The translations under genes and the position numbers were made by a program. The notes beneath the pieces are model-generated. The model was given only the letters and a program-made list of their open reading frames with translations. It was not told the origin of the DNA and did no database searches. From Thecamonas trahens ATCC 50062 (Eukaryota > Protista > Apusomonadida), in assembly GCF_000142905.1 (NCBI RefSeq), contig NW_013657678.1, positions 372,001-436,000 on the forward strand: 64,000 nucleotides of DNA, read 5' to 3'. Shown one piece after another: positions 4,912 to 52,749 of the stretch (position 1 is the first letter of the stretch; every line of letters starts with the position of its first letter).

Positions 4912-7900
4912 ATGCGATACTTGTTGTTGCTCACAATTTGCTTCGTTGCCACGGCCACAACCGTGGCCGGGTGGACTGTAGCTCCTGGCCCCTTCCTTCC
5001 CCAGCTCGCGATGACGTTCCCGGCGCCACCTGCCGATGCGGAGTCGTGGCTTGTTGGTGCGGCTGTGATCGACGGGAGCGAGCGTTCGGCGGGCCCGCCT
5101 CTCACCGCAATGCAGCGATTCCGCACCACGCTGACCGGGAGCGGAAGCGAGGCGTGGCCATACGCTCCCGAGGACAAGCTGTACATGCAAGAGCTCTCGT
5201 TGTGGGTCGACGACTCGCTTGACGAGCCTCACCTGTCGTTCTGGATCCAGACCCTGGAGCCGTATCTTGTCTTGTTCCTCGACCTCGACAGCTCAGGCAC
5301 GACAGGCGGGTCGTACCGCGGCACCTCGATCGGCATGGACGTGCGGTTGGAGGTCTTTACAAGCACTGTTGTCGTGGGCGCTCACAATCCGAGCTTCCTC
5401 AAGTCGTCGGGCTCGATCGTTGGCCCGCTCGCCTATCCGCCCACCGGCGACGCCTTTGAGGTCAACACCACGACGCCGTTCCCAGCCACGCCCGACGTCA
5501 GTGTCATGCGTTTCTCCATACCTCTCTCGGTCCTGCATGGTCTCGTTCCGGCGGGCACGCCGCTTGCCCTCGCACCCCCGACGCTTATGCCGCCCTAGTT
5601 TCCTTCCGCTTCTTCGCCATCGTCAACATCGACACCTTCCCCACCCCTGGCTTTGACGCCACCGCGCCGCTGTTTGCCTCGTTCGGCCCTACCGCCACCA
5701 CCCTTGTTCCTGCGGCGCCGCCGCCGCCAGCCCGTACACGCTTGAGCCACCGGCGCTTGCGCTCTACGACAACGTCACCGTGAGCGTCGTCGTCTTGGCT
5801 CGCGCCGCCAACGGAACCATCTTTGTCCCGCCGTCAGGCCCTGCGCCGCGTGACGTCGTCTTGCCGCGTGCCCAGCCGATTCTCGAAGTCAGTCCGCTCG
5901 GCCCGACCTCGTTTGCGCTCTCGGTCGACCTCCCGCCTGTTCTTCCTCTTAGTGCGAGGCTAGTCATCGCCCGCTCGCCCGTCGGCATGCCGGCTGCCCC
6001 GCTGGCCTCGGGTGCTCCGACAAACGTGACCATTGTCGTCGACAACGCACTCGACGCCTCCGCCGATGCCGGCGCCCATCTTGACCTCGTCGACAATTCG
6101 CCTCAGCTCGCCCCTGTCACCTCGTACTTTTACTCGGCCTTTGTAGTCACTGCGGCTGGCGACTTTCTCCCGCCGTCATATCGCTCGCACGACCGGACCA
6201 TCGGCTCGGTACTCCGCGGCCCGCTCCCAGGCATTAACGTTACCTCTGACTACCTGCTGTTCCTCTCAGCATGGACCGACGACCACATCCGCCATGCTGA
6301 GCGTTATGACCTCGTCATCTGCCATCCGGGTGGTGGCTCTTCGCTCATTACCGCAGACCAGGTCCGCGACCTCCGCGACGGGCCCGACAACGTTCTCGGC
6401 ACCGAAGACGACACCATCGTCATCGGATACGTCTCCGTTTGTGAGGACTATGGCGAGCCGCGGGTCGGCGCCACTCTCAACGATCCGCGCAACGCCTCGC
6501 TTCGTGCCGGCCTCAACTCGCGCGACGGCCCGCTGGCCCACTCGTACGAGACCGGCGCGATGTGGCTGCAAGGCCAGGGCTACCCCTCGTTCTACGTCGA
6601 CATGTCGGGCACGTTTACAGATGCCGGAGGCTCCTATTTTGAAGCCGTTCCCGACGGCAAGCCCGACCAGAACAGCGAGTGGGGCGGCTTGTACGTCAAC
6701 CCGGGCGACCCTCTCTGGTTCCAGTTTCTCAAAGAGGCGACTATTGGGACGGTCGCCATGGCCGGCTTTGACTACATCCTCAACGACCTCGGCATGGATG
6801 GCCTCTTCCTTGACACGCTCGACGCCCTCGCCCCCCAGGCCTACTATTGGCTCCGCCACGGCGGTGTGGACCTCATTGCCCGCATCGCCTACACCTACCC
6901 GGACGCGCTACTCATCGGCAATCGCCCGCTCCACCTGGCCATGCCCTCGTTCGCTGGCTCACGAGTCGACGACTTTCGCTCCTACATCAACGCCATCTAC
7001 TGGGAGTCGTGGGCCGCAGACACGAACCACTGGATGTCGCCCTCGGGGGCCGCCACCGTCGTTGCCGACATTGTCGCAGCTCAAGACAACCAAGACGGCC
7101 GCGGCTTGACCACCCTCATTCTCGACTACTGGTCCGTTGTCTTTGCCGCCCGCGAGTCTGGCGAGGCTCTCGGTGCGCCGTGGTACAGCAATCCGGGAGA
7201 CTACCTCGCCGAGACTGATGCCCTAGGATTTCCCACCTACATTTCGCCGTCGCGCTCGCTGGCCGAGTTTGACGACGTTGTCTACAACATCCACCATCCC
7301 GAGGTCTACGGTGGCGCGCCGGATCTTGTCATCGTTTCCATCATTCCTGACTTTACCCGCACCGTCGCAGAGTCTGGCTGGGTCTCTATCCCGGCTTCGA
7401 CGCCGGTCTCTGTAGTTGTTGTCAACCGCGGCGCAGGGCCGCCGCCTTTGGCAGATCCGTATTCAGCCACTCTCTCCATCTACCACAACGGCGAGCTCCT
7501 CTCCTCGCGGCTCATCTTCTTCTCAGAGGGCTTCTACACCTCGCCGGGTGGCCTTGTCACCGTCGTCGTTCCCGTCTCGCTCGGCAGCTCAACCATTGGC
7601 AACCATGTGTACGCCACCGTTGAGCTTGAGCCCGGCGTCATTGAGTATGACACGACCAACAATCATGACGACGTCCTCCTCGAGTCGTTCTTCAACATTG
7701 CCTACGGCACTACCTACAAGCACTCGCCGCCGCCAGACCTCGTCGTTTCTTCGGTTGTCCTTGATCCACCGCAGCCGCCGGCCGGCTCGTCTTTTGACCT
7801 CTTGGTAACGTACGCCAACGTCGGCGCCGGCATCGCTCAGGCAAGCAGAGCCTTCATCTGGTCGTCGTTTGCCCAAGCTCAGGTCGGCAACTTTGAAGCG

Positions 7901-10900
7901 CCGCACCTGCTGCCGTCGGCGACCACCACCGTCCGCGCCACCCATCCTCCCATCTCGCGAGTCGGCATGTACTCGCTCGCCATCACCCTCGATGCTACCG
8001 AGGCCATCCCAGAGGCCGACGAGACGAACAACGAGTTTTTCGTGCACTCCTTCGAGGTCACCCCGCCTTTCACCTCACTCGCCCTCCCATACCCCTCACC
8101 CATCACCACGGCCTCGGCCATGTCGTGGGAGTCGTCGCCCGACTCCTCGCTCGACTCGAACGCGCCCAACATGGTCTCGCTCTCGGCGGCCCACAGCCCA
8201 GTCGAGAACCTCATAGTGGCCACAATCACCGTTGATGGCGACTTTCCGCTTCGTCAGGGCGACGTCATTCTCTTCATCAACACCGACGAGTCTGACTCGA
8301 CCGGCTACCTCTCCGCCGGCTTTGATCGCATGATCCTCAACGACGTTTTCTACCGCCACGACCCGGCGGCCGGCCGCTCCTGGGGTTGGATCGTCGTGCC
8401 CACGCCTACCAACGGCCGCGAGTGGTCTGTTGGCTACCAAGACACCTCGGGACGTGTTGTCGTCATCGCCATCCCGCCCGAGCTCCTCTACTCCATCGCC
8501 TCGCCGCCTGTTGCCATCTATCTTCACGCCACCATTGTTGCCAACCCGGCCGCAGGCAACGGTGTCTCGGATGCCATCCCGGCCTCTGTGCTGACCGGCG
8601 GCAAAGGCCTTCCGCTTCGCCTACGTCACACCTCTAGCCCGGAGCTTTATCCGTTTGTTGCCACTGCGCTCATCGGCGAATCGGTCGACGGCGAGTCAGC
8701 TCTCTTCCTCGCCACCAACGTCACGGCCGGAAAGCTCTACATTCGCCTCGACTCGGTGTCGATGGCCAGGTACGGCGCCATCGATGTCGTCGCCGACGTC
8801 GCCCTCTTTCTTGCGGTTGCTGGACCAACGCCACGTATGGCCTACTTTGATGGCTCGCCTTGGCGCTTTGTCGGCTCGGGCTCGCCCGAAGCCATCCGTC
8901 CCTCGCCGCCGGCCGTCCGTGCCGCCCTCGGCTATGATCCAACACGAACAGAGGCCATGTGGGCGCCCGAGTCGAGCGCAGGGGTCAGCGCCAAGACCAT
9001 CCTCTCAAGCGGCGTCGTCGAGCTAGCCTTTGATGTCTCGCTCCTTGCCAAGGTCGGCATCTCGCTCGAGCCTACCGTCACTGCGCCGCTCCTGGTCATG
9101 GCTGCTCTAGAACAGGATGTTCTCGGTGCCAGCTCTGCATCGTGGCTTCCAGCTCGGGGTCCTGCCAGCGGCCTCCCACCGTGGGCCATCATCCCGCACT
9201 GCTCCGACGGCCGCCTTGGCCCGCTTGAGGAGGGCGTCGACTGCGGTGGGGTGTGCTCAAGCAACTGTGGTGTTCCTCACTGCTCCAATGGCTTTCTCGA
9301 TGCGGCGGAAGAGGGTGTCGACTGCGGCGGCGTGTGTGCGTGGACATGCGTTCCTGAAGCTCTCGGCCTCCCCGACTGGGCCGCTCGCACCCGCTCGCAG
9401 ATCCAGGGCCACTACGACTTTGACATCCTACCGGGCTTTCACCCTGACGCAGACGTCATCGAAGTCGTCCTTGCCCACTCGGACCACAATGTTGTAGTCC
9501 GCGCCGTCCCGCGTCGTGCCAAGCTCGACGTCCTTGCCAATCCCATCCCGCACTTTGGCTCTGTCAAGGTCTTTCTAGGTATCAAGGATCTCGACCGCGG
9601 CTACACCGGGCTTGGCCGGCCCGGCTTTTCGGCGCTTTTTGTCTTTATCGACTCGGTACTCCACGTCTACGACGAGGAAAACGCCGTGACCCAGACCGAC
9701 TGGGCGTGGATCCCCGTCCCGTCCACCGTGCCTGCGTCAGGCGTCAAGGCCGAGCCTGGCCGGCCTGGGGTCGACTTTGTCATCGCTCGTACCCTTCTCA
9801 CCACCGCCGCCGCCCTCGAGGGCCTCGAAGCCAAAGAGCTCCAGGTCTTCATCCGCATCACCATGAGCGGCAGCGACAAGGAGCTGCCGGCCTCGCCGAC
9901 CGAGGTTCTCTCGCTCACCATGAGCCAACCCGAACCCGGTGCCGGCGTCGTTGTCGATGGCATCATTGCCGAGTGGGCTAGCCTTGCACACACCTCTGTC
10001 ACCGACGGCCCCGATGACGCTCTGCGAGTCATCGACGCTCTGCCGTACCCGCACGCTATTGGACGCCAGAACGACTTTGCTGAAGTCAAGCACGCCACCG
10101 ACTTTTCCACCGTCTACGGTGCCTTTTCCATGTGGAGTGCCGCCAAGCGGCCGGTTGACGTCGAAACGGCAGTCTTTGTTGTCCCGCTCTCGGCCGCCAG
10201 CCGCGGCTATGCCCTTGGCGGCTCCGACTACGCCATCGCCATGGTCCTCGACGGCAAGGGATACCTTTACTCGGGTCCGCGGCGCTCGGCGCTTTGGTCG
10301 TGGTCGCCGGTCACGCTGCCGTCGCAGTTTGGCGTCGCCACACTTGGCCGCCACACCGAGTTCCGCTTCTCGCGCGAGCTCTGGGCCGACCTGAGCATTT
10401 CGATTGCCGAGCCGTTTAAGATTGTTGCACGCTCGACTTCGTTCCAAGGCTCGCCAACTAACTTTGGCGACGATCTCATTGACTACGTGCCCAACACCGG
10501 GCCATTTGCTGGCCCTGCGCCACCTGGCCCACCATCGCCACCGTCGCCTCCGCCTGGTTTGCCGTCACCGCCGCCTCCGCCTGGTCTCTCGGGGCCTATC
10601 ATGGTGGATGGGCTCGAAGCTGACTGGCTCGCCCTCCCGCCGACGCTGTCGCCTTTGCTTGTCTCAGACTCGCGCAACGATGGTCGCACCTCCAACAACC
10701 TCTACGCCACCGACATTGACCCGGCCTCTGGAGACTACGCTGCGCTGAAGAGCCTCACCTACGAAAGTGCCACCAGCGCTCTTGTCTCGACGTACGGGAC
10801 ACCGGCGCCGGGCGGCTCCTCGCGCCTGCACCACTCGATCTTCTTTGCCGTCTCTGCACCGAGTGTTCCTTCGGGAGGCTACGAGCTGAAGCCCGGCGTC

Positions 10901-13198
10901 TACGCCGTTGCCATGATCGCTGATGGTCTTGGCTACGTCTACAGCGGCAGCGGCCTTGCACGCGACTGGGTCTGGGCGCGGGTGAGCGAGGAGACTTTTG
11001 CTGCTGCCGCCGCTGGTGCCAACATTGAGGTCACCATGAAGCACTCTGCATTTGCTGGTCTCACACCGCCCTCCACACCTATTGCCGTCTATGCCCAAGT
11101 CCGCAACGATCGCGGAACGCTGGGCACGACCGATGACGATGTCTCTGACTACGTCCCCGAGATCAGCGCAGCGGTTCCTCCCCTGGCACCGCCAGAAAGT
11201 CCGTGGACCGGACCGCCGCGGCTGGCCCTCGGCATAGATGGCAATGGCGCCGAGTGGCCGGCGCTCGTTGCCTCGTCTCACGCTGCCGACCTCGCTGTTC
11301 GCATTATCCCTGACGCCGCCAACGACCCCGGCCATGCCGTCTCTACCCGCGCGCAACTGCCGGACCTAGCACCGGCTAACGATTTGCGCGAGGTCATCAC
11401 CGCGGCCGATGCAGACGTTGTTGCCGTCTACGCGGTCACCTACGCCTCGATCGGTACTCCGCCGACGCCGGGTGCGCGCTACCAAGTCTTTTTCGTCACG
11501 GATGCGCCGCGTGCTGGATACTTGCTCGACACTGGCAGAGTTGCCGTTGCGTATCTGGAGAACGGCGCCGGGTACGTCTACTCGGGATCCGAAGTCTCGC
11601 GGTCGTGGGCATGGACCTTGCTGCCCGCGCCATCAAGCCAGTATTCAGCTGTGGCGAGCGGCAACGCGTTTGAAGCCTTTATGGCCTCACGTTTCTGGGT
11701 TCATCTCGTCGATAGTGATGCTGCTGTGACCCCGATTGTCGCGCTTGTCAGTGGCGACTCGGGCTACGCTGACTTTGCGCCCGACGTCCGCCCCGCGACC
11801 GAGAGCTCCAAAACTGGCATTGCCGCCCACATCGAGTGGCTGATGGATCCAGGCGAGACGTGGCTCATTCGCGGCTCGTTGCTGCTTGCGCTTCTCATCT
11901 GCTGCTGTTGCAGCTTGCTTGTCCTCTGCATGTGGCGCCGGCAGCGCAAGCTGGCCAAGGCGTCGGCAGCACCTCTCGCTGCGGACAGCGCGTCGGACAG
12001 AGCCCCCACCGACGATGCCGCTGCCAGCATGTCTGCAGACCGGCAGATGGGCAAAGGTAACGATGGAGGCGGGGACTGGTCGGAGCATGGCCATGTTTCG
12101 GCGTCAACTTCGGCCGGACAAATTGTTCTGACCTCGATCTCGCCACCAGGCATCATAGTGCCAATGCCTGTGACCACGGCGCGTCGTAGCTCAGCGTCCG
12201 ACTCGAACGCATCCGATTTGTCGTCCAACTCGATACACGGCGCAACATCTCAGCCACGCGATGAGGCTCGCCTGCTTCCGCTTGTGCGTTCGAGCGAGTC
12301 CGACTCTGGCTCTCATTCGGACCATTCGCGGAGCGGGGAGACGTCGACAGCGACGTCTTCGGCGCTTGATGAGCCTGCCTACTACGAAGAAGCCGCGCAT
12401 GCCTATGAGCAGGCGGGCTATCCGCCACTGCCGCCGGAAGTTGCGCTTGCATCCAACCCGTATCAGAGTTGGGAACCGCGTGACCTGCCGCCGCCAAGCT
12501 CGTCAGGCGGGCATCTTTCCCCGCCCTCACCACAGAACATGCTGCGGTTCCAGTCGACTCTGCTGGACAATAGCGCGCGGATGCAGCTTAAGCAGTCGTT
12601 CCCGCGCTCGTTGTCGGCACGGCTGGGCCCGGGCTCGCGGCCCCCGCGCCGGGTTCCCCGCGATCGGGTCCGCAAGTCCGGTGGCGACAACATGCAGCGG
12701 ACACTCGCTGCGCTCCGCAAGAAGAAGCTGGCGGCCATGGCCCGCTCGCGGACCCTGCTCACTGAGGACATTACGTTTGGCCTGGAGGCACTCGGCCCAG
12801 CACCGCTCCTGGCCATGGCGTCGGGTCTCCTGCTCCGACACCAATCGTCACAGCTTCATGACGAGTCGGACTCGTCGTACACGAGCGAGTACGATCCCGA
12901 CCACAGCCTCTCACCGCCACCGTTTCCACAAGGGCGGCTCCCGCACAAGTCGCTCGCGCGTGAGCTGTCCAAGCCGTTCTCGCGGCGCCGATCGCGGGCT
13001 GATTGGGCCTCGCACGTCCTGGCCGCCGCTGTCGCGCAGAATCTCAACCCAGGACTCGCCGAGAACGACAACGACTCGGCTTCGGACATTGTCGTTGCCC
13101 GCCGCCGGCCAGATGTTGATCCGGACCCCATCCTTGATCGGCATCGCTCATCGTCCGTCGATCGTTTCCGCAGGCGCCGAAACATGCAGCGAGAGTAA
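4912..13198 (+). CDS. giant type I membrane protein A (~2760 aa): signal peptide, GH114/PelA-like TIM barrel, 2 CARDB, EEGVDCGG repeats, 3 x ~200-aa modules, TM with poly-Cys, disordered tail; two frameshifts (~5577, ~5713)
   Basis: Signal MRYLLLLTICFVATA; IGYVSVCED, DGLFLDTLD (6797-6823), LLIGNR, YWES; CARDB-type PDLVV...LDATEAIPEADETNNE; TM LLLALLICCCCSLLVLCMWRR. The bridging frame 5580-5712 (FFAIVNIDTFPTPGFDATAPLF) aligns with paralog B (AFASLVFDTVPTGGYAIGSPLF). Confidence 0.85.
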
Positions 13199-13337
13199 TA
13201 GCCCAGCGTAGTTGTCTCTGCCCAACCGGTGCTAAAAGCCGCCAGCCCCCCCCCCCCCCCCCCCCCCCTCCCCTCCCCCTCGCGCCACACCTCACGCACT
13301 TTACCCATCCCCCACCACCTTCATCTCCACACACCCA

Positions 13338-14384: not shown

Positions 14385-14397
14385 CGGCTACTCGTCG

Positions 14398-14399
<2 letters not shown>

Positions 14400-14448
<49 letters not shown>
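14400..14448. repeat. (GT)~24 microsatellite between convergent genes
   Basis: Seen directly. Confidence 0.97.
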
Positions 14449-14449
<1 letters not shown>

Positions 14450-14450
<1 letters not shown>

Positions 14451-15742: not shown

Positions 15743-15945
15743 GCTGCGTCTCTCTCTCGGTGTTGCACACAGCAACAATGGGTATCGCGGGCGGCGGGTG
15801 GGGGGGGGGGGGGGGGCGGGAGTGAGGTGGCTAGCCTCCACCGCTTGTGGCCAGGCCGGATCGGGCTCGGTCATCGGCGGCATGCTTTACATGTGAGACT
15901 CCACACAGGGGCAAGCATGTCAGAGTGCTGGAAGAAAAGCCAGCG

Positions 15946-17514: not shown

Positions 17515-17823
17515 TGCCGTCGGCTCGCGAAGCGCGTGGCGGACGGGCGCAAAGTTCGACGACAAAGAGCTTCCGAGTCAGCGCTCGCGCGGGCGCGGGG
17601 AAGGTAGCCTCGCGGAGCAATGTGAGGGCGCAGGCTTGGAAGGAAGTGAACAGCACAAGGACTGAGCCGGGTGCTGTGCCACAGAGAGAGATGCGATGCG
17701 ATGCGTGGCACGGTGGTGCCTTGCCTGACGGGTGTGTGTTCCTTTTGTGGGGGTGGAGTGTGCCATCGCGTGTGACACGGGCATGCGGCGAGACGAGGCG
17801 ACAGCGGCAGAACAATGTGACTC

Positions 17824-31208: not shown

Positions 31209-31296
31209 GCAACCAAGTATGATTAACAACCCCCCCCCTCCCCCCCTCCTTTCCCCCACTTAGATTGCTCCAGGCAATACGATGGTGTTTAGTTTC

Positions 31297-34475: not shown

Positions 34476-34540
34476 AGCGCCGCAAAGAACAGCAATGAAA
34501 TGCAAGAGCATGCCATGCGTTTACCACAGCGCACTCGCAC

Positions 34541-37500
34541 TTACCGGCTAGACCCGAGGTCGACATCCGGGAGCGAGACGGAGCCCGAGCCCGAGTCCGA
34601 GCATGCGCCCGTGCCCACTCCCGACCCTACGCCCGAGCCGGTGTTGAGCCCGTTCTCGTTGAGCCGCGGGTTCGATGCATCGTACACCCAGTAGTCAATG
34701 ACTTCGGACGCCATGCCCTCAGCAATCCAGTCGGTCTCTGTGGTCAGGACCCACGACGACTCCTCGGATCCAGCCAGGCCCGACGTCTGCCCTGACTCTT
34801 GGGTGCGGAGTGCCGATGAGCGCGATGCCACAGCGGCCGCGCCTGCTCCGCCCGCAGCCGCGGAAGCGAGCGCAGCCTGGGTTCGCGGGCCGCGGCTGCG
34901 CCGGTCAGGCCCGTCAGAGGACATCGACACGTCTGACGACGACGACGGGCTGCTGGACCGCTTGTCGGTTGCGGCGGCACCTGCTCCAGCTGCCGCAGTC
35001 AACAAGGCCGACTCGGACGCCAGTGACGACACCGTGTCGTCCGGCGATGTGTGACTCATGTCGGTATGCCTGCTCGCCTCGCCGGCGGGCGCCTTGTCGC
35101 CGCTCGCAGCGATGCCTCCCGCAAGGCTGCTTGCCGCCCGCGGACCCTTGTCGCCGCGCCTGGCTCCGGCGCTCCGCGTGCTACGCTTGCGCCGCGATGC
35201 CGCGGCTGCGCCGACGGCTGCACCAACACCAACACCAGCCGCCGTCTTGGTAGCAGCCTTTCGCCCACCAAACTTGGCTCCGTCCTTGCCTAGTTCCACA
35301 GAGAGGACCGGACGCAGTGACGAGGCCGCGGCGGCGCGCGCTGCCACCACCCGCGGCGACGTGTCGAGCTTGGTCACAGGCTTGCGCGGCTCGTCGCTCG
35401 ACATGCTGAACGAGTCGGTCTCGTCACCCAGCACAGACTGCGAGCCCGATGCCGAGACGAGGCCCTCCTGCGAGTCCGAGAGGTGAATGACCGCCACTTT
35501 CTCCACAGGGTCGACAATCGTGAGCGCCTTCGCCTCCTCAGGCTCCTCCTTCTTGCGGCAGCAGAGGAAGAGGAGCCAGAACAGGCAGCAGCAGCAGCAG
35601 AGTGCAAGGAGCGCAAGCAGCATGCCGAGGAGCCAGTCGGAGAGACCCGAGCCCGAGCCCGAGTCGCGCCCACCTCCGGTCACCGATCCAGCCGTGGTTG
35701 TACCAGGTGGCGGCGGCGGCGGCGCAGTCACGCTCCGCTCGAGGTCAGGTACATAGTCTACCGTCCCGTCAGGCATCATCAGTGCACCGACCACCCGCAT
35801 CGGCTCGCTGGTTCCGCCGACTACGGCATCAGCCCACACCGCGTTGGCCATCCACGCCTGGGTCATGTTGCCATGCGTCGCCATTCCATGTTGACGCGTC
35901 GACATCGGCAGCGCCTGCCACGTGCCGTCGACCCACAAGTACCCGATGCCGTCCTCGATCATGGCCACAGCAACAACTCCAGGCTCAACTTCGTAGCCCG
36001 ACCCGACAATCTGCGACGGATCTGTCGGCGCAAAGTACACTCGCTGCACCACATCGCTCATCGGTGCCTCACCAGCTTCGCCGTAGGTCGCCAGCATGGC
36101 AGACGTGATCACTCCGTCCGTTGCGTACGCGAGCGCCTTGTAGTCGTTGCGGTCGCCCGGAGAAATCGCAGGCGCGCCGACTTGCGGCGGCAGGCCATCG
36201 TCCGGGCCGTCGTTGATCCACTTGCCGTTGTAGAGCGGATTGGACAGCACCGGCCCACCCGGCGCCCATACATCGGCACCCAGCCCCGGATTGTTGATGT
36301 CGACCACAAGCGGTGGCACACCGCCGTATGTGCTACCCGACGGCCGCCCACCAATTTTGACCTCGGTGTTCGGCACAAAGTCAACAACATCGTCGTGCGG
36401 ATTACCCGGCGTGCCCGAGTCTGAGACCAGCGCGCCAACCACAGAAATCGGCGTCAACCGGTCGACGCCGTACTCAGGGTTGCTCCACACGTTCTTGGAG
36501 ATCTTGACCTCGGTCACCCGACCCGACCGAACCACGTCATACTCGGACGCATCCAGCGGGATCCACTTCCACTCGCCTGAGCGACCGGTCCCGCCGTAGC
36601 GGTACCCGATGCCGTTGTACGTCATTGCAACCGCAAACCGACCATCTGCCATCTCGTAGCCGGTCTTTGGCAATCCGGCAGGCGAGAAGAAGATGATCTC
36701 GTCAGCCGTCGGCTCATTGCCCGTACGTCGCGTGAGCAGCGCAGCGACCTCGTCGTCTGACGCCACTTGCAGTAGCGCCGTGTAGTCGTCAACCACATCC
36801 AGGCTACCCGAACCACCAGCATCGAGCCGCACACCGTCGTTCACCCCGTCTGTGCTTGACTCGACGTTAAACGTCGGTGCCAGCGTGGCCCAATCTGACC
36901 CGCTTCCATCTACCACCACCCACAACGGCGGGAGGGGTGATGGTGGCGGAGGCGATGGCGGCGGAGGCGACGGTGGCGGCGGCGACGGAACAACTGGCGG
37001 GAGAGGCGATGGTGGCGGAGGCGATGGTGGCGGCGGTGGCGGAGACGGGCTCGGTGGCGGCGGCGGCGGAGATGGGCTCGGTGGCGGCGGCGGCGGAGAC
37101 GGGCTCGGCGGCGGCGGCGGCGGAGATGGGCTCGGCGGCGGCGGCGGCGGCGGAGACGGGCTCGGCGGCGGCGGCGGCGGCGGCGGCGGAGGACTTGGCG
37201 GCGGCGGCGGTGGGCTTGAAGGCATACCCATAGGTGGCGGCGGAGCAGGGACCTGCCCCGGCCCCCAGGCCACAAGATCGGGACCAGCGTCGACAATGTC
37301 GTCGGTGGTGTTGTCGGGCGTGCCTCGCGTGTCAGTCAGCGTCGCCACAACCTGGGTCTCCCACTCTGGATCGACGCCAAACTCGGGATTGGACCACGCA
37401 AGCTTGGAGACTCGGTACTCTGAGATGGGGCCACCGGTGTGTGAAGTGTAGTACGAGCTCGGCAGCCGCGACCACGACCAAGTGTTCGAGAGCCCAGATC

Positions 37501-40500
37501 CAGTGTAGACGTAGCCGATGCCACGATAGATCATGGCTTGGGCATACCGGCCGTCCGCCAGTTCGTACCCAACGGTCGCGTTGGGGTGGACAAAGAAGAC
37601 GGTCTCCTCAATGTTGGCTCCGATTGATCCGTTGCCATACCGCATCATGTACACTGCCACTGACGAGTTGTCTTGCGCATACGTCACCGACGCCACATCG
37701 TGCGCAGGCTCGAGCTCCCGCTGAATCGGATAAGGATCCTCTTTGGAGAGCCCATCGTTCGATCCGTCGTAGTACCGCGTGAGCTTGAACTGCGGTCCCA
37801 CACCGCCCCACTCACCGGCATGTCCGTCGACAGTAACAGGCACGTTCCACGTCGGCTCGCCCGGCCCAAACCACACTCCCGTGCCTGGAGGTGGCGGCGG
37901 CGTCGAACTTGGCGGCGGCGCAGGCACGCCGTCCCAAACGTCCGGCACGTAGTCGATGACATCATCATACGGGTAGCCGAGCGTCCCGCCGTCGGAAAGC
38001 ATCGTCGCCACCACCGTCATCGGCGTATCAGTCGTCAGGCCGTACGTGCCGTCGCTCCACACACTCCGCCTCATGATAGCCTCCACTGTGTTGCCCGACC
38101 GGCCGTAGCCAAAGTCAGCCCCATTGATCGGCTCCCATGCCCACTCGGACGACCGCACCGAGCCGGCGTACTTGTACCCGACGCCGCCCTGGATCATCGC
38201 CGCAGCGTATGTGCCTGGTGCCACGGCAAAGCCGCGAGTGATCGTGGTCGAGTCCTCCGGCACAAAGTACACGGTCTCGTACACTCCCGGCTCCGGCGAT
38301 TCGTCCTCTTCGCCGTACGTCATCGTGTACGCCGCGAGCATGTCGTTGACGTCGACATAGCCCATGGTCGAAAAGTCGTTGCGCGCCTCCATGGCCCGCA
38401 CAGAGCCGGCCTGCGCATTCCACGTCCGTCCGTCGTTGCGCCCGTCGCTAACGTTGGTTGCTCGGCCCAAAGCCCGAGCGTGAACCACTCGTCAAGCTGG
38501 CCGTCCGCAAACACACCAGGCGGCGCCGGCGGCGGTGGCGGGTACGCAAACCCGATGACGTCCGGCACATAGTCGACCAGATCGTCGCTAAAGTCAAACG
38601 GCGTTCCAGCTGTGTTGGTCAACGTTGCCACCACAGACATGTTGATTCCAGGCGCAAGTCCCAGTCGCGGTGCCGTCCATGCATCGCGGTACATCCGCAC
38701 CTCGGTCTGTCCGTTCACCGTAACCGACTCGTAGTAGTCAGCCGGCAGCTGCGTCCACGACCACGCGGCAGACTTGGACGACCCAGCGTAGACGTAGCCG
38801 ATGCCGTTGAGAATCATCGCCACTGCATGATGGTCTGGCGCCACTGTGTACCCCGCGTCGCCAGCGCTCGCGTTGGACGGGAGAAAGAACGTCGCGTGCT
38901 GAGCCCCACCCGAGTACGTCTCACTCGGCGAGTACGTCCTCGTCATCGCCACCACAGACGCTTCGTCATGCGCTGTTTCAAGCCGGACAAAATCATCGCG
39001 CGGGCCGGTGTACCGTGGATACGGCGAAGGATCAGAAGATGTCAGCGCGTCGTCCGGCCCGTCGTTGATGACCCGGTGGCCATAATCAGCCCCAAGGCCA
39101 GGCCACTCGGACAAGTCGCCGTCCACAACCACGATGCCACCGGCTCTCGGCAGGCCTGGCGGGGGCGGCGGCGGCGACGCCGAAAACGGCGGCGGCGGCG
39201 CGCGGATTGCAAACGGACCCGAGTCTGGAATGTGGTCGATGACGTCGTCGTTGACGTCCGACGTGCCCTGGGTCTTGGCGATCACCGAGTACACGTACAT
39301 ACCGTCGTTAAAGTCGAGACCATAGTCGCGGCCCGCGCCGGCCCACACTGACCGCTCCATTCGTACCTCGGTCACATTGCCCGACCGAGCAAAGTCGCTC
39401 GACCACTCGGGCAGCTGCCGCCAGGCCCAAGTGCCGGACCGGTCCGGCCCATCATAGGCAAAGCCAAAGCCATTGACAATCATCGCCACAGCATACCCGC
39501 CCGGAACAGGATACCCGCGTGTTGCGTCGGGCGACGCAAAGTAGAACGTCGTCGTTGTGTCGGCGTCAGGCGCCTCGCTTGCCCCGGCATATGTACCCGC
39601 ACGCGCCGCCACGTACGCCGCATCCGACACGTAGGTGAGGACCGCGTAGTCGTTCTGCGGCGCAATGGGATGCGCAAAAGGCGACGTATCCGACACCAGC
39701 AACCCGTCGTTCGAGCCGTCGGTGACATCGACGCGACCCCACTGCGGTTCGTCGAGTGACGATGGCGAGACCCACTCGGAGCCGTCGCCGTCGATGACAA
39801 CAGGAAGCAGCGACGGCGGCGACGGCGGCGGCGGCGGTGCGCCGACGTCAAACGGCCCAGTGTCGGGCGCCGTGTCAACCACGTCGTCTGTACTGTCAAA
39901 CGGCGTGTTCTGCGTGTTTGTCAGCTGGACCACTGCAGCCATCAGGGCGTCAGCAGGCACACCGTACTCGGCACCCGCCCACGCCAGCCGTGACATCCAC
40001 GCCTCAGTGGTGTTGCCAGACCGGCCATAGCCGAACCGTGTCGACGCGAGCGCCGACCACGACCACACACCCGACTTGGTGTTCCCGGTGTAGCGGTAGC
40101 CGATGCCGTTGAGGATCATGCCGACAGCGTACACGTCTGGATGAGCCTCATACCCAATGAGCGTGTCCGACGCGTTGGCCGGTCCAAAGAACACCGCTGT
40201 CTCCACCCACGAGTCGGGCTCAGCGTTGTCTTGTGCGTAGGTCTTGAAGAGAGCCGCCACTCGCGCGACGTCCTCGACGTGCGCGAGCGTCGCGATATCG
40301 TTGGCGGCGCCGGTCACTCGCGGGACCCGGTTCGCTGACAGCGTCGCGTCGTTGGGCCCGTCGGTGATGTCGACTCGATTGACTGACGCGCCACTGTAGG
40401 AGCTCCATTCTGAGTCGTCACCGTCTGCCAGCAGACTTCCGAGCGCTGGCGGCGGCGGCGGCGGGCTCGGTGGGCTCGGTGGGCTTGGCGGGCTCGGCGG

Positions 40501-43500
40501 CACATAAACGTACGTTCCATAGTCCGGCACGTCGTCGTAGAGGTCGTCGGAGAGGTCGCCGGGCGTCCCGCGCGTGTTGGTCACCGTGGCCACAGCCATC
40601 ATGTGGCTGTCTCTATCGAGACCAAAGCCGGCGGCCCACGCCGACTTGGAAATCGCGGCCTCGGCGGTATTGCCGCTCGACACCGCTGAGAACGCGTCAG
40701 CCTCGAGAGCGCTCCAAGTCCATCCGCTTCCCACGGTCGTACCCGAGTAAACGTAGCCCTGCCCGTCGAGGATCATGGCCACTGCGACAATGCCCGGTGC
40801 GACGCGGTAGCCGGCGCTTGCGAGCGTCTCATCTGCAGGCGCAAAGAAGAGCACCGTCGAAGTGCCTGCGTCCGGCGGCGTAGCCGTCGGCGCGTGCGTC
40901 TGCAGCCGTGCGTACATGGTGGCATCGTCAAACGCAGTCGAGACCACGGCGGCATCGTTCTGCGCCCCGGTGACGACGTTGGTAAAGCCGTCAGCCGAGC
41001 GCGCGTCGTTAGCACCATCGATGGTGTCGATGCGGCCATAAGATGCACCGAGCGCATCCCAATCGCCGCCACTGCCGTCAATGATAATCGGTGCCCTGGG
41101 CGCAGGCGCCCATGTCGTTGCCATCTCAACATGCTCGCCGCTCTCCGGCACAACGTCCGTCCGCCGTTCGCCACCTTCGGGCGGAATGTATGTCACGGTA
41201 GCGTACGCCATGTACGTCGCGTCCGGACCCTGATCCTGAGCCAGCCCTGCATCGGCAGCTGCAGATGCTGCTCCTGGCATGATCGTGTGCCGCGGCGTGG
41301 TAAGCAAGCTCCGCACAATCGTGATCTCCAGGCCAGCAGGACCGGCTGAGATGTCGATGAGTCTGCCCGAGGTCGGATGCCGCGGCGAAATCTGCACCCA
41401 CGACCAACCGAGGCCATCTGCGCCGCCGGCAGCATCGTCGTAGGCAAAGAACACATCGTTAAACACCATAAACTGGGCGCGGAACCCGGTCCCGCCTACC
41501 AGCGAGTAGCCCGATGGCAGGCCCTTGACGCCCAGAAACACGATGAGCTCCATGTTGTTGGCAGCCGGAGCCGTGAGCGGCGTTGCCGATCCGGCCAGTT
41601 CGAGCCGGACGTGGACGTGCGAGAGCGAGTGACTAAGCTCGAGGCCGACCACATCGGCGTAGTCAGGAAGGCTGGGGTTGGCCGACGTCGCGTCGTTGAG
41701 CGCGTCGACAACGCGAACGCCGTTGTTGATGCCGGCCAACGAGGTTGGCGTCAGGCTCGGCACACACTGCCACCCGCACACCGAGCCGCAGTCGATGCCG
41801 TCTTCGGCCGGATCGATGATGCCGTTTGAGCAGTGCGCCGGCGGGCAGCTCCGTCCGCATGCGCTCCCGCAATCGACACCCTCCTCCTGCGATGAGTACA
41901 TGCCGTCCGAGCAATGAGGCAGGGGGAGCCACTCGAGCCGCGGAAGCGCCACGCCGGTCTCAGGCAGCCAGCCAGCGGTCGAGTACGTGTTGACGGCATT
42001 GCTCGCTGCCACAATCCGGACGAGCACCGGTGTGGTCACGCTCGGCACAGCAGGAAGGCCAGCAGCGGTGAGCGCGGCCTCGCTAATTGAGGCCTCAACA
42101 ATGCCAGCCGACGGCGTAACAATGATCGAAAGCGACGTTTGCGGAAGCGGCGACCACAGAAGAGTGTCGTCCGACGAGGCAAGACCAAGCGCGGCCCGGA
42201 TGCCGAGTGGCGAAGCAATCGTGCCCGAGCTCGACCCGACGTACGCGTACGGATCACCACCAAACACTGCGAGCTTTGGCTCTGGCGGATTACCAGGCGT
42301 CGCAAGAACCATAGCAAAGTCGTCGACAACCGTGATGGTAGTGTCTGCGAGCGAGAGCACGTCGAGGCGGTAGTAGGCACCGGACGATGAACTAAACGAG
42401 TACAGCGTTCCCGACGCCGAGCTCGCTGCCCGGTGAACTGCGGTGAGGAGAGGGAAAGTCGATGCGGCTGGCACGCCGGTGGCCAAGACAAGGCCGTCCT
42501 CGGCAAAGCTCACACCGTGCGGGATGGCATCGACGTCGCCCGGACCTGAGTTGTCGCGCGGAGTGGCCGACACAAAGATGCGGAGCGCGTCCGGTCGGGC
42601 CGAGTACAGCAAGTTGACATCAATGTCAAGATAGGTGACGCGGGCGAGCCGGTCCTGATGCGCGAGCGTGACGGCCGAGGTCTCGGCGTTGTACTGCGGA
42701 TGCGGAAGCCAGCCCCAGCCAGTTCCGGCAGCTGCGTCATGGATCGACGGAACGCCGTCCAGAACAAGGACGTCAAAGCCGCGAAGGTAGCCAGAGGCCA
42801 GTGAGTCGTCGGTGTTGAAGAATATGGCAAGCTGGGAGTTGTCGAGGAGCGACGGCTCTGCGGCCGAGACCATGACGGTCACCTTGGTGCGGGCACCGTC
42901 CATGACAGCGGAGACCGCAAGGAGGTCGGTGGCGCCTGCCTTGAGCTTGATGGCCGGCAGCGAGTCTGTCGAGCCAAAGGAAAGCGCGGTGGCAGTGGCC
43001 GGGTAGGTGTACGGCAGCGGGGCAATCGGCGGGCGGACCGAGAACGTCATGGAGGCTTCGTTGTTGCCTTCGTCTGCCTCGGCACGGCGAGTACAGCGTC
43101 GAGCGTGACCGCGACGGCGTAGCCGGCGCCAGGCTTGTTGATGGGCTCGTGGGGGATGTCGATGGTGGCGGTGGCGCCAGGGAGGAGCCACGGCGTGTAC
43201 ACGTTTCCGTTCTGGGCCTGGACCGACGACGACCACATGTAGGCACGGGAACTTTGCGAGATGCCGACGCCGATGTTCTGCATGGTGACAACAACGTCAA
43301 AGGCCTCACCGGCACGCGGGGCAGGAGGGCGGAGGGTCATGTTGGTAACAACCAGGTCCGGGGCCGGGTCGTGCTTGTACACATGCGATGGCGCGGTATA
43401 AAAGTACGACTCGAGGAGGACATCATCGTCGTTGTTCGACGTGTCGTGCTCGGCCGCCTGACCAACTACCTCGGCCGTCACGTACAGGTGGTTGCCGATG

Positions 43501-46199
43501 ACGACACCAGTCGTGTTGAGGTAGACGTTGACCGAGATGGTGGCGAGCGAGCCGGGAGCATACGCGCCGTCGGTGAGCTCAATCTGAGGGGTGGCGATGG
43601 TCTCGCCGTTGTGGACGACGGTGATGCGGGCGGTGAGTGGCGCAGCCGGCGGTGGTGGCGCACCGCGGTTGGCAACGGTCACTTCGACCTCGACCACGTC
43701 GGGGATCGGCGTCCACGCCGCGTTGTCGGCCGACCGACGGAAGGTCGGCAAGATAGAGACGACAACGAGGTCAGGCATGCCGGCGTAGACGTCGGGATGG
43801 TGGATGTTGTAGACGACATCATCAATTTCGGCCAGCGAGCGCGACGGCGAGATGTGTGTTGGAAAGTCGTGCGACTCGGTGGCAGCCAGGTACTCGAGCG
43901 GCGTCTCGTACCATGGCGCACCTTGCGACTCACCAGACTCACGGGCGGCAAACATAACGGCCCAGTAGTCGAGGACGAGGGTGGTGAAGCCGCGACCATC
44001 AGCGTTGTCCTGGGCAGCAACAAGCTGGTCATTGAAGACCTCGCCCGAGACCTCGCCCCACCAGTAGTTCATGTCGGCGGCCCACGACTCCCAGTAGACG
44101 CCGCTGAGGTAGGAACGAAAGTCGTCGTAGCGAGAGCCGGCAAACTCGGGAAAGGCAAAGTGGAGCGGGCGGTTACCGATGAGCACGGCGTCCGGGTAGT
44201 CGTACGCAAGGTGAGCGATAAGATCAAGGCCGCCGTCGCGAACCCAGTAGTAGTCCGAGACCATGGCCGGAGGCTGCCAGAACGACCACGGTGCCGACAC
44301 GCCGAGGGTGTCAAGGAAGAGGCCATCCATGCCGAGCTCGTTGAGGATGTAGTTAAAGCCGGAAGTTCCGTGCTCAGCTGCAGTTGCCGTAGTCAGAAAG
44401 TCGTACCAGAGCGGATCGCCCGGGTTGACGTACAGGCCGCCCCACTCAGTGTTCTGGTCAGGCTTGCCGTCGGGCACGGTGTCAACATACGCGCCGCCTG
44501 TGTCCGAGTACACGCCCATCATGTCGACGTACCACGATGGGTAGCCGCCGTTTGCAAAGGAGACCTCGCCCGTAGCGTAGTTGTACGTTTGCGGGCCGGT
44601 GCCGGTGTTGAGGGCGGGCGAGAGCGAGGCATCACGCGGAACATTGAGTCCCCCGCCGGGTCCGGGCTCACCGTAGTCCTCGCCCACAGAGATGTAGCCA
44701 ATGACGATGGTGTCGTCGGCGTTGCCGAGAATATCGTCGGGCCCGTCACGGATGTCGCGGACCTGGGCGGCGGTGATGAGCGCCGAGCCGCCACCCGGGT
44801 GGCAAATGACAAGGTCGTACTTTTCGGCCTTGGTCACTTCTGCGGCCGACCACGCCGAAAAGAAGACCATGTAGTCTGAGGTGGCGGTGAGGCCCGGAAT
44901 CGGGCCGCGAAGGTGCGAGAGGATCGATCGGTCACGCGAGATCCAGTTGCTCGGCTCGAAGCCACCCGTGTCGCTCACAACAAACGCAGCAAAGTAGTAC
45001 GATGTGATGGGCGCAAGGGCAGCGTCGTTGTCGACGAGCGCGACAGCGGCTCCGGGTGTGTGGCTCGAAAGCGGTGCGCTATACACGACCGACTCGCTGG
45101 CACCGGCGCCGCCCGGGGCGGTCGGAAAGCCGACGGTAGAGCGGACAATCTCGATGCGGCCGCCTGTGGCTGGAAAGACAGGCGGGAGGATGACGGCGAG
45201 GTCAAAGGCCGAGACCGAAGCCGGCGTGACGTCGAGGCTGGCAAAGGTCCGCGGGAGTTCGACGATGTCCGAGGTGTCAAAGACCGTACGCGAGCCGTCG
45301 TTGTTGACAGCAACGAGGACGAGCTCGTAGCCCACGCCCGGAACGATGCCGTGGTCAGCGGCCGAGACCACAACCTGAGCGTCCGAGGTGGCGGCGGTGG
45401 CGATTGTCTGGGGGCCGATAGCAAAGAAGAGCGGCGAGCCGATGGCGTAGCCGCCAGTCGGCACGGTGTCGAAAACCAGCGAGGCAAAGGCATGGGCGGC
45501 AAACTGAGCGGTGTACTCACTCAGCGAAAGGCCCGCAAGCGGCGACGTGCCCGGAACATGGTCGCGGAAGACAGCGAGAGGAATGGTGGCATTGAGCGAA
45601 TAAATGCCATCAGATGTCAGCGCGGCAGCAAGCGGGACGGTCTGCCCGGTCTCGGACCACGCCGAGGACTGAGTGGCAAACGGCTGATTGACTGATAGTT
45701 GGTATGCCGTGTTGTGCGTCTGGATGGAGACGGATGCATCAACGTGGTTGTACTCGATGCGGAGCTCGGCACCGATGGGCATGCCGTGGTGAGCAAAGCC
45801 CGTGGCGGCCGAGCCGTCGAGGTCAAAGTAGACAAAGATGTTAGTGGCGAGGGCGGTGAGGAAGATAGAGAGCGACTGGCTAGCCGCGTTGACCTCAAAC
45901 CGCACTCTACGAAGATACGACGGGTCCTCGGGAGGATACGGCCACGCCAGGTCCGGATCTTGAGACTCAAGCCCGATGCCGTAGCTGCCTGCTGCGGCAA
46001 AAGCGCCGCTTGCCGACTTGCGCGACACCTGGGCCGCACGCAGTTCCCACGACGCAACCGAAGCCGGTGCGGAAGGAAGGGAAATCGTCATTCGAGCCGG
46101 ATGCGCCTCCAACGAGGGCGTAATAGCCCCAGCGACCACACTCGCCGCAATGATGAGCACAATTACGGTCGTAAGCATCTGGATTCCTGTGCTGGTCAT
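34541..46199 (-). CDS. giant type I membrane protein B (~3890 aa), paralog of A: GH114/PelA-like domain, 2 CARDB, Cys repeats, 8 x ~200-aa modules, SP3-5 extensin tract, TM with poly-Cys; frameshifts at ~43081 and ~38470
   Basis: ORFs 43047..46343, 38320..43236 and 34541..38488 join (LAVP-EADEGNNE matches A's AIPEADETNNE; EWFTLG-LGRATNVSDGRND). DGLFLDTLG at 44301-44327, YWES, TM LLALLALCCCCCLFWLLFLCC. Confidence 0.87.
36930..37250 (-). repeat. extensin-like (S)P3-9 coding repeat in protein B
   Basis: GGC-rich repeats on the + strand, translating to SPPPP/SPSPPPPP. Confidence 0.9.
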
Positions 46200-52729: not shown

Positions 52730-52749
52730 ACTCTCTCCACACTTCCAGG

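What the first reader, a model, noticed from the sequence alone, without database searches (positions are those of the whole stretch)
4912..46199. Two paralogous giant cell-surface proteins with a bacterial GH114/PelA-like hydrolase domain: candidate biofilm-grazing machinery
Seen: once four single-base frameshifts are repaired, 4912-13198(+) and 34541-46199(-) encode collinear paralogs of ~2760 and ~3890 aa. The order is signal peptide, N module, TIM barrel, 2 CARDB, Cys repeats, repeat array, Pro linkers, TM with 4-5 consecutive Cys, disordered tail. The barrel is by far the most conserved part (YDLVICHPGGG, DDTIVIGY, DGKPDQNxEWGGLYVNPGDPLW, DGLFLDTL, GNRPLH, YWESWAAD). Established: IGY.S.GE, DG.FLDT.D and downstream .ES motifs typify GH114 (Ega3) and GH166 (PelA hydrolase) enzymes that cleave alpha-1,4-GalN/GalNAc polymers such as Pel and galactosaminogalactan; CARDB is mainly prokaryotic. 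Inference: a horizontally acquired glycosidase was rebuilt as a long, palmitoylated, membrane-tethered enzyme-adhesin that lets a surface-feeding bacterivore bind and dissolve biofilm matrix. I know of no described eukaryotic protein with this architecture.
Basis: partly seen in the sequence, partly recalled or inferred. Interest (0 to 1): 0.82.

Follow-up and report, generated by a model that had tools for sequence, protein, structure and literature searches.

The report
Bacterial-derived giant surface glycosidases in Thecamonas
Two huge membrane-anchored surface proteins of the gliding protist Thecamonas trahens carry a sugar-polymer-cutting domain of the PelA/Ega3 biofilm-hydrolase superfamily, and almost their whole outer part was taken over from giant bacterial surface proteins; the fold and origin are shown, the biofilm-eating role is not.

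Summary
4912-13198(+) and 46199-34541(-) encode collinear paralogs. Each is split by two 1-nt frame changes. The order is signal peptide, N module, a conserved ~370-aa domain, CARDB, two Cys repeats, 3 or 8 repeats of ~200 aa, Pro linkers, a TM helix with CCCC/CCCCC, and a long tail.

The conserved domain gets no Pfam or direct PDB sequence hit. Its AlphaFold model (pLDDT 89) is a (beta/alpha)8 barrel. It is closest to GH191 (Z 24), PelA hydrolase GH166 (Z 21.9) and Ega3 GH114 (Z 19). A family profile hits PelA at E 2e-13, with the FLD Asp on PelA D160 and the WES Glu on PelA E218.

New here:
- The genome is Thecamonas trahens and holds four paralogs.
- The N module, barrel and CARDB are all collinear (31-35% identity, E down to 1e-159) with giant surface proteins of Spirochaetia and Verrucomicrobiota. 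An ectodomain cassette was acquired, not a lone glycosidase.
- The repeats look CBM9-like.
- Barrel dN/dS is 0.10-0.33, which argues against old pseudogenes. All four paralogs nonetheless show frame changes in the assembly.

Substrate (Pel/GAG-like) and the biofilm-grazing role stay inferred. The scan noted the same kind of protein on another piece of this genome (s1-743441).

The parts
4912..5598 (+). Protein A, first ORF piece: signal peptide (about 4912-4974) and the N module
   Evidence: 27% identical to the B N module
5570..5740 (+). Protein A: two 1-nt frame changes (frame 1>0 at the C5 run 5575-5579; frame 0>2 near 5715-5735)
   Evidence: the alignment to B is continuous across both
5780..6211 (+). 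Protein A: end of the N module and an fn3-like domain before the barrel (by eye only)
   Evidence: no Pfam hit; bacterial kin carry a faint fn3 hit
6212..7315 (+). Protein A barrel: (beta/alpha)8 glycosidase-like domain with Asp201 (FLD) and Glu265 (WES). Derived features: Cys for the near-invariant Gly77, and a 10-aa deletion after FLDTL
7316..7723 (+). Protein A: CARDB-like domain 1 (not recognised by Pfam)
7724..8059 (+). Protein A: CARDB domain 2 (PF07705, E 1.5e-11)
8060..9181 (+). Protein A: unassigned beta-rich module(s) with a D.D/TG-type motif
   Evidence: no Pfam hit
9197..9349 (+). Protein A: two 4-Cys repeats
9932..11809 (+). Protein A: three repeats of the ~200-aa CBM9-like module, with Pro-rich linkers
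11879..11947 (+). Protein A: TM helix containing CCCC
11948..13198 (+). Protein A: low-complexity cytoplasmic tail of 414 aa
45309..46199 (-). Protein B: start codon at 46199, signal peptide, N module
   Evidence: atlas lead to Glucodextran_C, weak only
43779..44912 (-). Protein B barrel with Asp201 and Glu275 (B numbering), invariant across 11 close kin
43098..43364 (-). Protein B: CARDB (PF07705, E 3e-8)
43077..43085 (-). Protein B: first 1-nt frame change, inside the CARDB end motif
41764..41913 (-). Protein B: two 4-Cys repeats
35654..41103 (-). Protein B: array of eight ~200-aa CBM9-like repeats with Pro/Ser linkers (long PPPSP tract near 36929-37216)
38444..38463 (-). Protein B: second 1-nt frame change, inside a repeat
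35546..35620 (-). Protein B: TM helix containing CCCCC
34541..35545 (-). Protein B: low-complexity cytoplasmic tail of 334 aa

Best explanation
These are two of four paralogous Thecamonas trahens genes for giant type-I cell-surface proteins. The ectodomain is a bacterial cassette: an N-terminal beta-sandwich module, an fn3-like domain, a strongly acidic (beta/alpha)8 glycoside-hydrolase barrel of the GH114/GH166/GH191 superfamily, CARDB domains, and arrays of CBM9-like modules. It was acquired from bacteria whose nearest sampled relatives are Spirochaetia and Verrucomicrobiota. In the protist it gained a Cys-cluster TM helix, a long cytoplasmic tail and Pro-rich stalk segments, and then duplicated. 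By analogy with PelA and Ega3, the barrel most likely works as a retaining endo-glycosidase. The Asp at the end of beta4 (FLD) would be the nucleophile and the Glu at the end of beta6 (WES) the acid/base. The flanking beta-sandwich modules would hold the polysaccharide. The most likely substrate is an extracellular, partly cationic alpha-linked hexosamine polymer of Pel/GAG type made by prey bacteria, so the protein would bind and loosen biofilm matrix at the feeding surface. Shown: anatomy, fold, catalytic-pair alignment, bacterial kinship, purifying selection. Inferred: activity, substrate, surface location, palmitoylation, role in feeding.
For: Fold: AF2 model with pLDDT 89 and pTM 0.91. 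Foldseek tops are GH191, PelA and Ega3. VIA-align gives TM1410/GH191 Z 24.0, Env-GH191 Z 22.1, PelA hydrolase Z 21.9, Ega3 Z 19.0, all over about 240-250 residues. Sequence: family profiles hit PelA at E 2e-13 and 3e-10. They align GLFLDTLD (D160), NRG and VES (E218, which is Ala in the E218A entry 5tsy) to the invariant D201, N237-R238 and E265. PMC12054363 gives Asp as nucleophile and Glu as acid/base for Ega3, PelA and GH191. 13 of 48 homologs hit PF03537, and 28 of 30 top ESM-atlas clusters are PF03537. Origin: B residues 105-1065 align with P0005 residues 578-1490 at 35% identity, E 1e-159. The kin lie in bacterial contexts and named MAGs. In the tree the four paralogs form one clade (100) inside a 100-supported clade with bacterial sequences, within a wide bacterial family of 241 clusters. 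Constraint: barrel dN/dS is 0.10-0.33. Charge: barrel D+E 50-53 against K+R 14-19, like the electronegative clefts described for Ega3 and GH191. Repeats: best fold matches are carbohydrate-binding modules (4jpq Z 8.7, Sas6 Z 8.1, CBM9 Z 7.7). One bacterial homolog sits next to a Spherulin4 (GH135-like) gene.
Against: No enzymology. No Pfam GH114 hit for the Thecamonas domains even at E 10, and no direct PDB sequence hit. Identity to solved enzymes is only 13-19%. The same fold group holds endo-fucanases (GH168, PbFucA; Z about 18) and GH66 dextranases (Z about 17.5), so the fold does not fix the substrate. TmGH191, the top structural match, showed no activity on GAG in PMC12054363. In every characterised system (PelA, Ega3, Sph3) the hydrolase serves the producer's own polymer, not predation. 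All four paralogs carry frame changes in the assembly. The rest of the ectodomain is also acidic (157 D+E against 80 K+R), so charge is a weak argument.
Confidence: 0.55

Rival explanations
1. Same enzyme class but another substrate. The barrel would cleave a different extracellular alpha-linked glycan, such as sulfated fucan, dextran-like glucan or another algal or bacterial polymer, as a general surface polysaccharidase inherited from polysaccharide-degrading bacteria.
For: GH168 and PbFucA endo-fucanases and GH66 dextranases share the fold at Z 17-18.5 and are weak profile hits (E 2e-4 to 7e-4). 7 of 48 homologs also hit the GH66 Pfam model. The donor-like lineages are Verrucomicrobiota and Spirochaetia.
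Against: Profile similarity to PelA is six or more orders of magnitude better than to the fucanases or CITases. The barrel has a net charge of about -31 to -39, which is an odd fit for a sulfated anionic substrate.
Confidence: 0.25
2. The proteins act on Thecamonas's own surface coat or adhesive trail. They would trim or remodel an endogenous glycan for gliding, theca turnover or detachment, as PelA, Ega3 and Sph3 do for their producers.
For: All characterised relatives process the producer's own exopolysaccharide (PMC12054363). The architecture is membrane-tethered, stalked and has a long cytoplasmic tail.
Against: No canonical GH114 (PF03537) or Spherulin4 (PF12138) match was found in the genome. 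This test is weak: the Spherulin4 control rang in no genome, and synthase and deacetylase genes were not searched. No GalN polymer is known to me from apusomonads (own knowledge).
Confidence: 0.15
3. The genes are decaying pseudogenes. The frame changes are real and no full-length protein is made.
For: Two frame changes in each of A and B, and at least two more in each of the paralogs on C19 and C7. Only some sit at homopolymers (C5 in A, G4>G3 in C19). The public gene models bridge them with implausible gaps of 2-50 nt, or start downstream of them.
Against: Barrel dN/dS is 0.10 between the youngest pair (dS 0.19) and 0.15-0.33 for the others. Catalytic and motif residues are intact in all four paralogs. 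The frame changes lie at different positions in each paralog. Apart from these shifts there are no in-frame stops across ORFs of up to 7.4 kb. This pattern fits scattered assembly indels or very recent lesions.
Confidence: 0.15
4. The barrel is a non-catalytic lectin-like domain, and the proteins are purely adhesins or receptors.
For: Protein A has Cys in place of the near-invariant Gly of the Y.S.GE motif, a 10-aa deletion just after the nucleophile strand, a longer branch and a higher dN/dS.
Against: The Asp/Glu pair and 14 or more other family-invariant residues are kept in all paralogs, including A.
Confidence: 0.05

Closest known systems
PelA hydrolase domain (GH166), Pseudomonas aeruginosa, PDB 5tcb
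   Same: (beta/alpha)8 barrel at Z 21.9. It is the best sequence-profile match (E 2e-13). The motifs Y.S.GE, N..W.S, G.FLDT.D, NRG and .ES are shared, with D160 and E218 aligned to the invariant Asp and Glu.
   Different: Only 16-19% identity, and no single-sequence hit. The Thecamonas barrel is about 110 residues longer, with a much larger beta3-alpha3 insertion. PelA is a periplasmic bifunctional enzyme in a biosynthetic operon, not a giant membrane-tethered multi-module protein.
GH191 (TM1410 of Thermotoga maritima, PDB 2aam/9eux; Env-GH191, PDB 9ep5)
   Same: Best structural matches, Z 24.0 and 22.1. Env-GH191 acts on Pel, and the family is described with an electronegative cleft and an Asp/Glu pair (PMC12054363).
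   Different: No sequence-profile hit at E<=1. These are small secreted enzymes of about 280 aa.
Ega3 (GH114), Aspergillus fumigatus, PDB 6oj1
   Same: Fold at Z 19.0. It is a eukaryotic membrane-anchored endo-alpha-1,4-galactosaminidase with D189/E247.
   Different: PF03537 does not hit the Thecamonas domains. Ega3 is a small single-domain fungal enzyme inside the GAG biosynthetic cluster.
Giant surface proteins of Spirochaetia and Verrucomicrobiota MAGs (P0005-P0010; loci L006-L013)
   Same: True homologs. Barrel identity is 43-52%. N module, barrel and CARDB are collinear over about 960 residues (E 1e-121 to 1e-159). They have CBM9-like modules, signal peptides and, in some, a C-terminal TM anchor.
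   Different: They are uncharacterised themselves. They lack the Cys-cluster TM, the long low-complexity tail and the PPPSP linkers.
CBM9 / glucodextranase C-terminal / DOMON-like beta-sandwiches (PDB 1i82, 1ulv, 4jpq, 7uwu)
   Same: Best fold matches of the ~200-aa repeat, Z 7.0-8.7 over 153-173 residues. The repeat shares the opening DG...[DE]W motif (from my own knowledge of CBM9).
   Different: The Z values are only a little above the Ig-like background of about 6. There is no Pfam hit, and sugar binding is untested.

Membership tests
GH166 (PelA hydrolase) | (beta/alpha)8 barrel superposable on PelA hydrolase | tested here: met
   VIA-align Z 21.9, rmsd 3.1 over 242 residues; Foldseek E 9e-11
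GH166 (PelA hydrolase) | Asp (D160) on beta4 and Glu (E218) on beta6 conserved and aligned | tested here: met
   Profile alignments put D160 on the FLD Asp and E218 (Ala in 5tsy) on the WES Glu. Both end predicted strands, 197-201 and 261-265
GH166 (PelA hydrolase) | Significant direct sequence similarity to a characterised member (CAZy-style criterion) | tested here: inconclusive
   Single-sequence phmmer against PDB gave no hit at E<=10. The family profile gave E 2e-13 and 3e-10, but only over the second half of the barrel. dbCAN was not available
GH166 (PelA hydrolase) | Endo-alpha-1,4-N-acetylgalactosaminidase activity on Pel | not testable with these tools
   Needs enzymology
GH114 (Ega3; Pfam PF03537) | Match to PF03537 above the gathering score | tested here: not met
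   No hit at E<=10 for either window domain. No PF03537 match anywhere in the genome. 13 of 48 bacterial homologs hit weakly (best E 5e-7)
GH114 (Ega3; Pfam PF03537) | Fold shared with Ega3 | tested here: met
   Z 19.0 over 238 residues
GH191 (TM1410 / Env-GH191) | Fold shared with TM1410 and Env-GH191 | tested here: met
   Z 24.0 and 22.1
GH191 (TM1410 / Env-GH191) | Sequence similarity to family members | tested here: not met
   No GH191 chain among the profile hits at E<=1
CARDB (PF07705) | Pfam match above the gathering score, two copies per protein | tested here: inconclusive
   The second copy is met (E 1.5e-11 in A, 3e-8 in B). The first copy (7316-7723) has no hit at E<=5
CBM9-like carbohydrate-binding module | Beta-sandwich fold matching CBM9, or a Pfam CBM9 hit | tested here: inconclusive
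   Model pLDDT 86.6. Foldseek CBM9 E 3e-4 with TM about 0.4. VIA-align Z 7.7 (CBM9) and 8.7 (4jpq), against a background near 6. No Pfam hit
CYSTM (PF12734) Cys-rich TM module | Pfam match above the gathering score | tested here: not met
   E 0.035, 14.7 bits against a cut-off of 25.2, in B only

The most novel reading that the evidence does not exclude
A free-living protist captured an entire giant bacterial surface glycosidase-adhesin ectodomain, about 1000 or more collinear residues. It welded this to a eukaryotic palmitoylatable TM helix and a long signalling or cytoskeleton-linked tail, and amplified it to four genes. The result would be a prey-matrix-degrading feeding receptor. The barrel clade, together with about 240 bacterial clusters, would form a new glycoside hydrolase family beside GH114, GH166 and GH191.
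Probability: 0.25. Interest if true: 0.75.

Novelty: new variant of a known kind. Interest (0 to 1): 0.58.

Why it matters
Enzymes of the PelA/Ega3 group are the main tools under study for dissolving Pel- and GAG-based biofilms. So far they are known only from the organisms that make those polymers. A predator-side, surface-tethered relative would give a molecular handle on how gliding bacterivores deal with biofilm matrix. It would also be a clear case of a very large multi-domain bacterial surface protein being domesticated by a eukaryote, not only a single enzyme domain. Separately, the roughly 240 bacterial clusters that Pfam leaves largely unannotated point to an unclassified glycoside hydrolase family. 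The public records call these proteins only 'CARDB domain-containing' or 'uncharacterized'. I found no paper linking Thecamonas to GH114-type enzymes.

Tried and rejected
- Pfam on the whole pieces and on the isolated barrel found only CARDB, with nothing for the barrel even at E 10.
- Single-sequence PDB search of the barrel found nothing.
- The word-index protein search with the 368-aa domain gave only 2 hits because of its length window. With the long ORF it found only the three annotated T. trahens models, so there is no independent assembly to test the frame changes.
- The introns explanation for the frame changes is rejected. Paralog alignments are continuous across every site, with no spare sequence.
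- A pure homopolymer-error explanation fits only partly. One of the four window sites (C5) and one C19 site (G4>G3) lie at runs; the others do not.
- Bacterial contamination is rejected. There are four copies on three contigs of 0.5-0.68 Mb, with host-like GC and eukaryote-type tails.
- Pfam on the repeats, the Cys repeats, the middle modules and the N module found nothing usable.
- The atlas search on the N module gave only sub-threshold leads, with Glucodextran_C at 0.88.
- The fold search 'atlas' library was unavailable.
- The Spherulin4 search of the genome is uninformative, because its control rang in no genome.
- An attempt to tie contig L018 to Thecamonas through its upstream ORF found no match.
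All pieces were searched separately.

Full report
**Observation.** The window is G000:C2:372001-436000 of a 28.7-Mb genome in 131 contigs with 63% GC.

Protein A is read from ORFs 4912-5598(+) and 5780-13198(+). Protein B is read from three ORFs on the minus strand: 46343-43047, 43236-38320 and 38488-34541, with the likely start ATG at 46199.

Three-frame translation shows two frame changes in A. The first is frame 1>0 at the C5 run 5575-5579. The second is frame 0>2 near 5715-5735. B also has two, near 43077-43085 and near 38444-38463. At each site the alignment to the paralog runs on without any spare sequence, so these are single-base indels and not introns.

BLASTP of the pieces confirms collinearity. 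Identity is 27% over the N module, 55% over fn3-like+barrel+CARDB, and about 30% over the rest. The barrel is A 6212-7315 and B 43779-44912.

The other listed features are also present:
- two 4-Cys repeats in each protein
- the ~200-aa repeat array: three repeats in A; in B seven aligned here plus one that spans the second frame change
- Pro/Ser linkers
- TM helices with CCCC (A) and CCCCC (B)
- low-complexity tails of 414 aa (A) and 334 aa (B)

Pfam finds CARDB only for the second of the two presumed copies. No read-through or joined sequence was given to any tool; the pieces were always searched apart.

**What the conserved domain is.** Pfam gives nothing for the isolated domain even at E 10. 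A single-sequence search of PDB chains also gives nothing. The exhaustive HMMER search of 1.84 billion cluster representatives gives 241 relatives at E<=1e-3.

With 48 of these as an alignment (A1), AlphaFold2 returns a confident eight-stranded barrel (pLDDT 89.2, pTM 0.91). It has a large beta-rich insertion after strand 3.

Foldseek ranks GH191 alpha-galactosaminidases, PelA hydrolase and Ega3 first. VIA-align gives these Z-scores:
- TM1410 (GH191): 24.0
- Env-GH191: 22.1
- PelA hydrolase (GH166): 21.9
- Ega3 (GH114): 19.0
- GH168 and PbFucA fucanases: about 18
- GH66 enzymes: about 17.5

Profiles of the family (A1, A2) hit PelA at E 2e-13 and 3e-10. The printed alignments place PelA chain residue 135, which is D160 in GLFLDTLD, on the invariant FLD Asp. 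They place the PelA NRG on the invariant N237-R238. They place chain residue 193, which is E218 and reads Ala in the E218A entry 5tsy, on the near-invariant WES Glu.

In the model the Asp ends strand 197-201 and the Glu ends strand 261-265. PMC12054363 names the equivalent Asp as nucleophile and Glu as acid/base in Ega3 (D189/E247), PelA (D160) and GH191. It also describes a beta-sheet insertion after beta3 with a lid Trp, and an electronegative cleft.

Further support:
- 13 of the 48 homologs weakly hit PF03537.
- 28 of the 30 nearest ESM-atlas clusters are PF03537 (a lead only).
- The barrel is strongly acidic, with 50-53 D+E against 14-19 K+R. The rest of the ectodomain is acidic too, so this argument is weak.

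The domain is still not a formal member of GH114, GH166 or GH191 by sequence criteria. It looks like a separate clade of the same superfamily.

**Organism and origin.** Cluster look-up names a 70%-identical paralog as AMSG_01807 of Thecamonas trahens ATCC 50062. Its contig length equals that of C7 in G000. The genome has four copies: two in this window, one on C19 (AMSG_11831) and one on C7. Public records call them 'CARDB domain-containing' or 'uncharacterized'. The model for A starts downstream of the frame changes.

The closest non-Thecamonas relatives have barrels 43-52% identical. They are giant proteins of 960-2670 aa. Their contigs are bacterial, including 4.3-Mb and 10.5-Mb chromosomes. 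Genome records name Spirochaetia, Spirochaetales, Verrucomicrobiota and Limisphaerales MAGs.

The similarity is not limited to the barrel. B residues 105-1065 align collinearly with P0005 residues 578-1490 at 35% identity, E 1e-159. The alignments with P0006-P0010 are similar, and the later repeats align weakly as well.

The bacterial proteins have signal peptides. They open and close with modules of the same DG...[DE]W type. Two of them (P0009, P0165) end in a TM helix with a short tail.

A quick maximum-likelihood tree of 53 barrel domains gives these results:
- The four Thecamonas copies form one clade (SH-aLRT 100).
- This clade is sister (91) to a sequence from a 3.8-kb, 65%-GC Logan contig of unknown source.
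- Both sit inside a 100-supported clade with the Spirochaetota and Verrucomicrobiota proteins.
- That clade lies within a broad bacterial radiation.

Bacteria-to-eukaryote transfer of a whole ectodomain cassette is therefore the best reading.

**The repeat module.** Ten repeats align well, with 13 invariant positions, and fold confidently (pLDDT 86.6). The best fold matches are all carbohydrate-binding beta-sandwiches:
- 4jpq (putative carbohydrate-binding protein): Z 8.7
- Sas6: Z 8.1
- CBM9 (1i82): Z 7.7
- glucodextranase C-terminal domain: Z 7.0

These stand only modestly above an Ig-like background near Z 6, and Pfam is silent. A sugar-binding role is plausible but not shown.

**Are the genes alive?** All four paralogs show frame changes in this assembly, and the changes are at different places in each. 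The public models bridge them with gaps of 2-53 nt.

Only some sites lie at homopolymers: C5 in A, and G4 against G3 in C19.

Against old pseudogenes:
- Barrel dN/dS is 0.098 for C19 against C7 (dS 0.19).
- It is 0.15-0.17 for B against C19 or C7.
- It is 0.26-0.33 for pairs that include A.
- Every family-invariant residue is kept.
- Apart from the shifts, ORFs of up to 7.4 kb are free of stops.

I rate assembly indels, or very recent lesions, as more likely than long-standing decay. No independent assembly or transcript was found to settle this.

Protein A is the most derived copy. It has Cys for the near-invariant Gly of Y.S.GE, a 10-aa deletion right after the nucleophile strand, a longer branch and the highest dN/dS.

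**Mechanism and rivals.** The best reading is a surface-tethered retaining endo-glycosidase, flanked by glycan-binding sandwiches on a stalk, that acts on extracellular polysaccharide.

A Pel/GAG-like cationic hexosamine polymer is favoured for three reasons. The sequence profile is far closer to PelA than to the fucanases or dextranases. The top fold matches are galactosaminidases. The domain is very acidic. One bacterial homolog also neighbours a Spherulin4 (GH135-like) gene.

Even so, the fold group also cuts fucans and dextran. TmGH191 was inactive on GAG in PMC12054363. All characterised relatives serve the polymer's producer. A different substrate, or action on the protist's own coat, therefore remains open.

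Searches of the genome for PF03537 and PF12138 found nothing. The PF12138 control was uninformative, and synthase and deacetylase genes were not searched.

**Novelty.** I found no paper linking Thecamonas with GH114-type enzymes. The fold and chemistry belong to a known kind. What is new is the clade, the giant membrane-tethered eukaryotic architecture, and the whole-cassette bacterial origin. The scan flagged the same kind of protein on another piece of this genome (s1-743441).

Noticed in passing
L006/L007 8075-9886 (bacterial contigs carrying P0151): The gene just upstream of the 2501-aa bacterial homolog carries Pfam Spherulin4 (PF12138), the family of the GAG hydrolase Sph3/GH135. dTDP-sugar synthesis genes lie downstream. 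This hints at a galactosaminoglycan-related neighbourhood.
   Followed up: no
L018 (Logan SRR10663363 contig, 3798 nt, 64.6% GC): This contig holds the nearest relative of the Thecamonas clade (53% identical to the B barrel). It has an N module in another frame, the protein ends just after the barrel in a Cys-rich tip, and the upstream ORF is a Ser/Pro/Arg-rich, eukaryote-like, low-complexity protein. It may come from a second eukaryote.
   Followed up: partly
window 6428-6445 and about 6815-6830 (protein A barrel): Protein A has VSVCED where all kin have a Gly (Y.S.GE motif). It also lacks about 10 residues after FLDTL that B, the C19 and C7 copies and the bacterial kin all keep. A also has the longest branch and the highest dN/dS. 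This suggests altered specificity or relaxed constraint.
   Followed up: partly
G000:C19:232389-238894 and G000:C7:191797-199400 (L014-L017): The two other paralogs (AMSG_11831, AMSG_01807) have barrels 95% identical in DNA to each other. Outside about 2.9 kb they are too diverged to align by blastn, which may reflect gene conversion of the N module-barrel-CARDB part. Their public gene models patch the frame changes with gaps of 2-53 nt.
   Followed up: partly
window 49462-50878(-), 51587-54150(-), 61276-63937(-), 46489-49079(-): Several other same-strand ORF pairs in the window overlap or abut in different frames. These could be introns or further 1-nt indels. If they are indels, the assembly has a general indel problem, which bears on the pseudogene question.
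   Followed up: no
P0009 and P0165 C-termini (Spirochaete-type homologs): Some bacterial homologs already end in a single TM helix plus a short basic tail. Membrane tethering of this ectodomain therefore predates the transfer.
   Followed up: no
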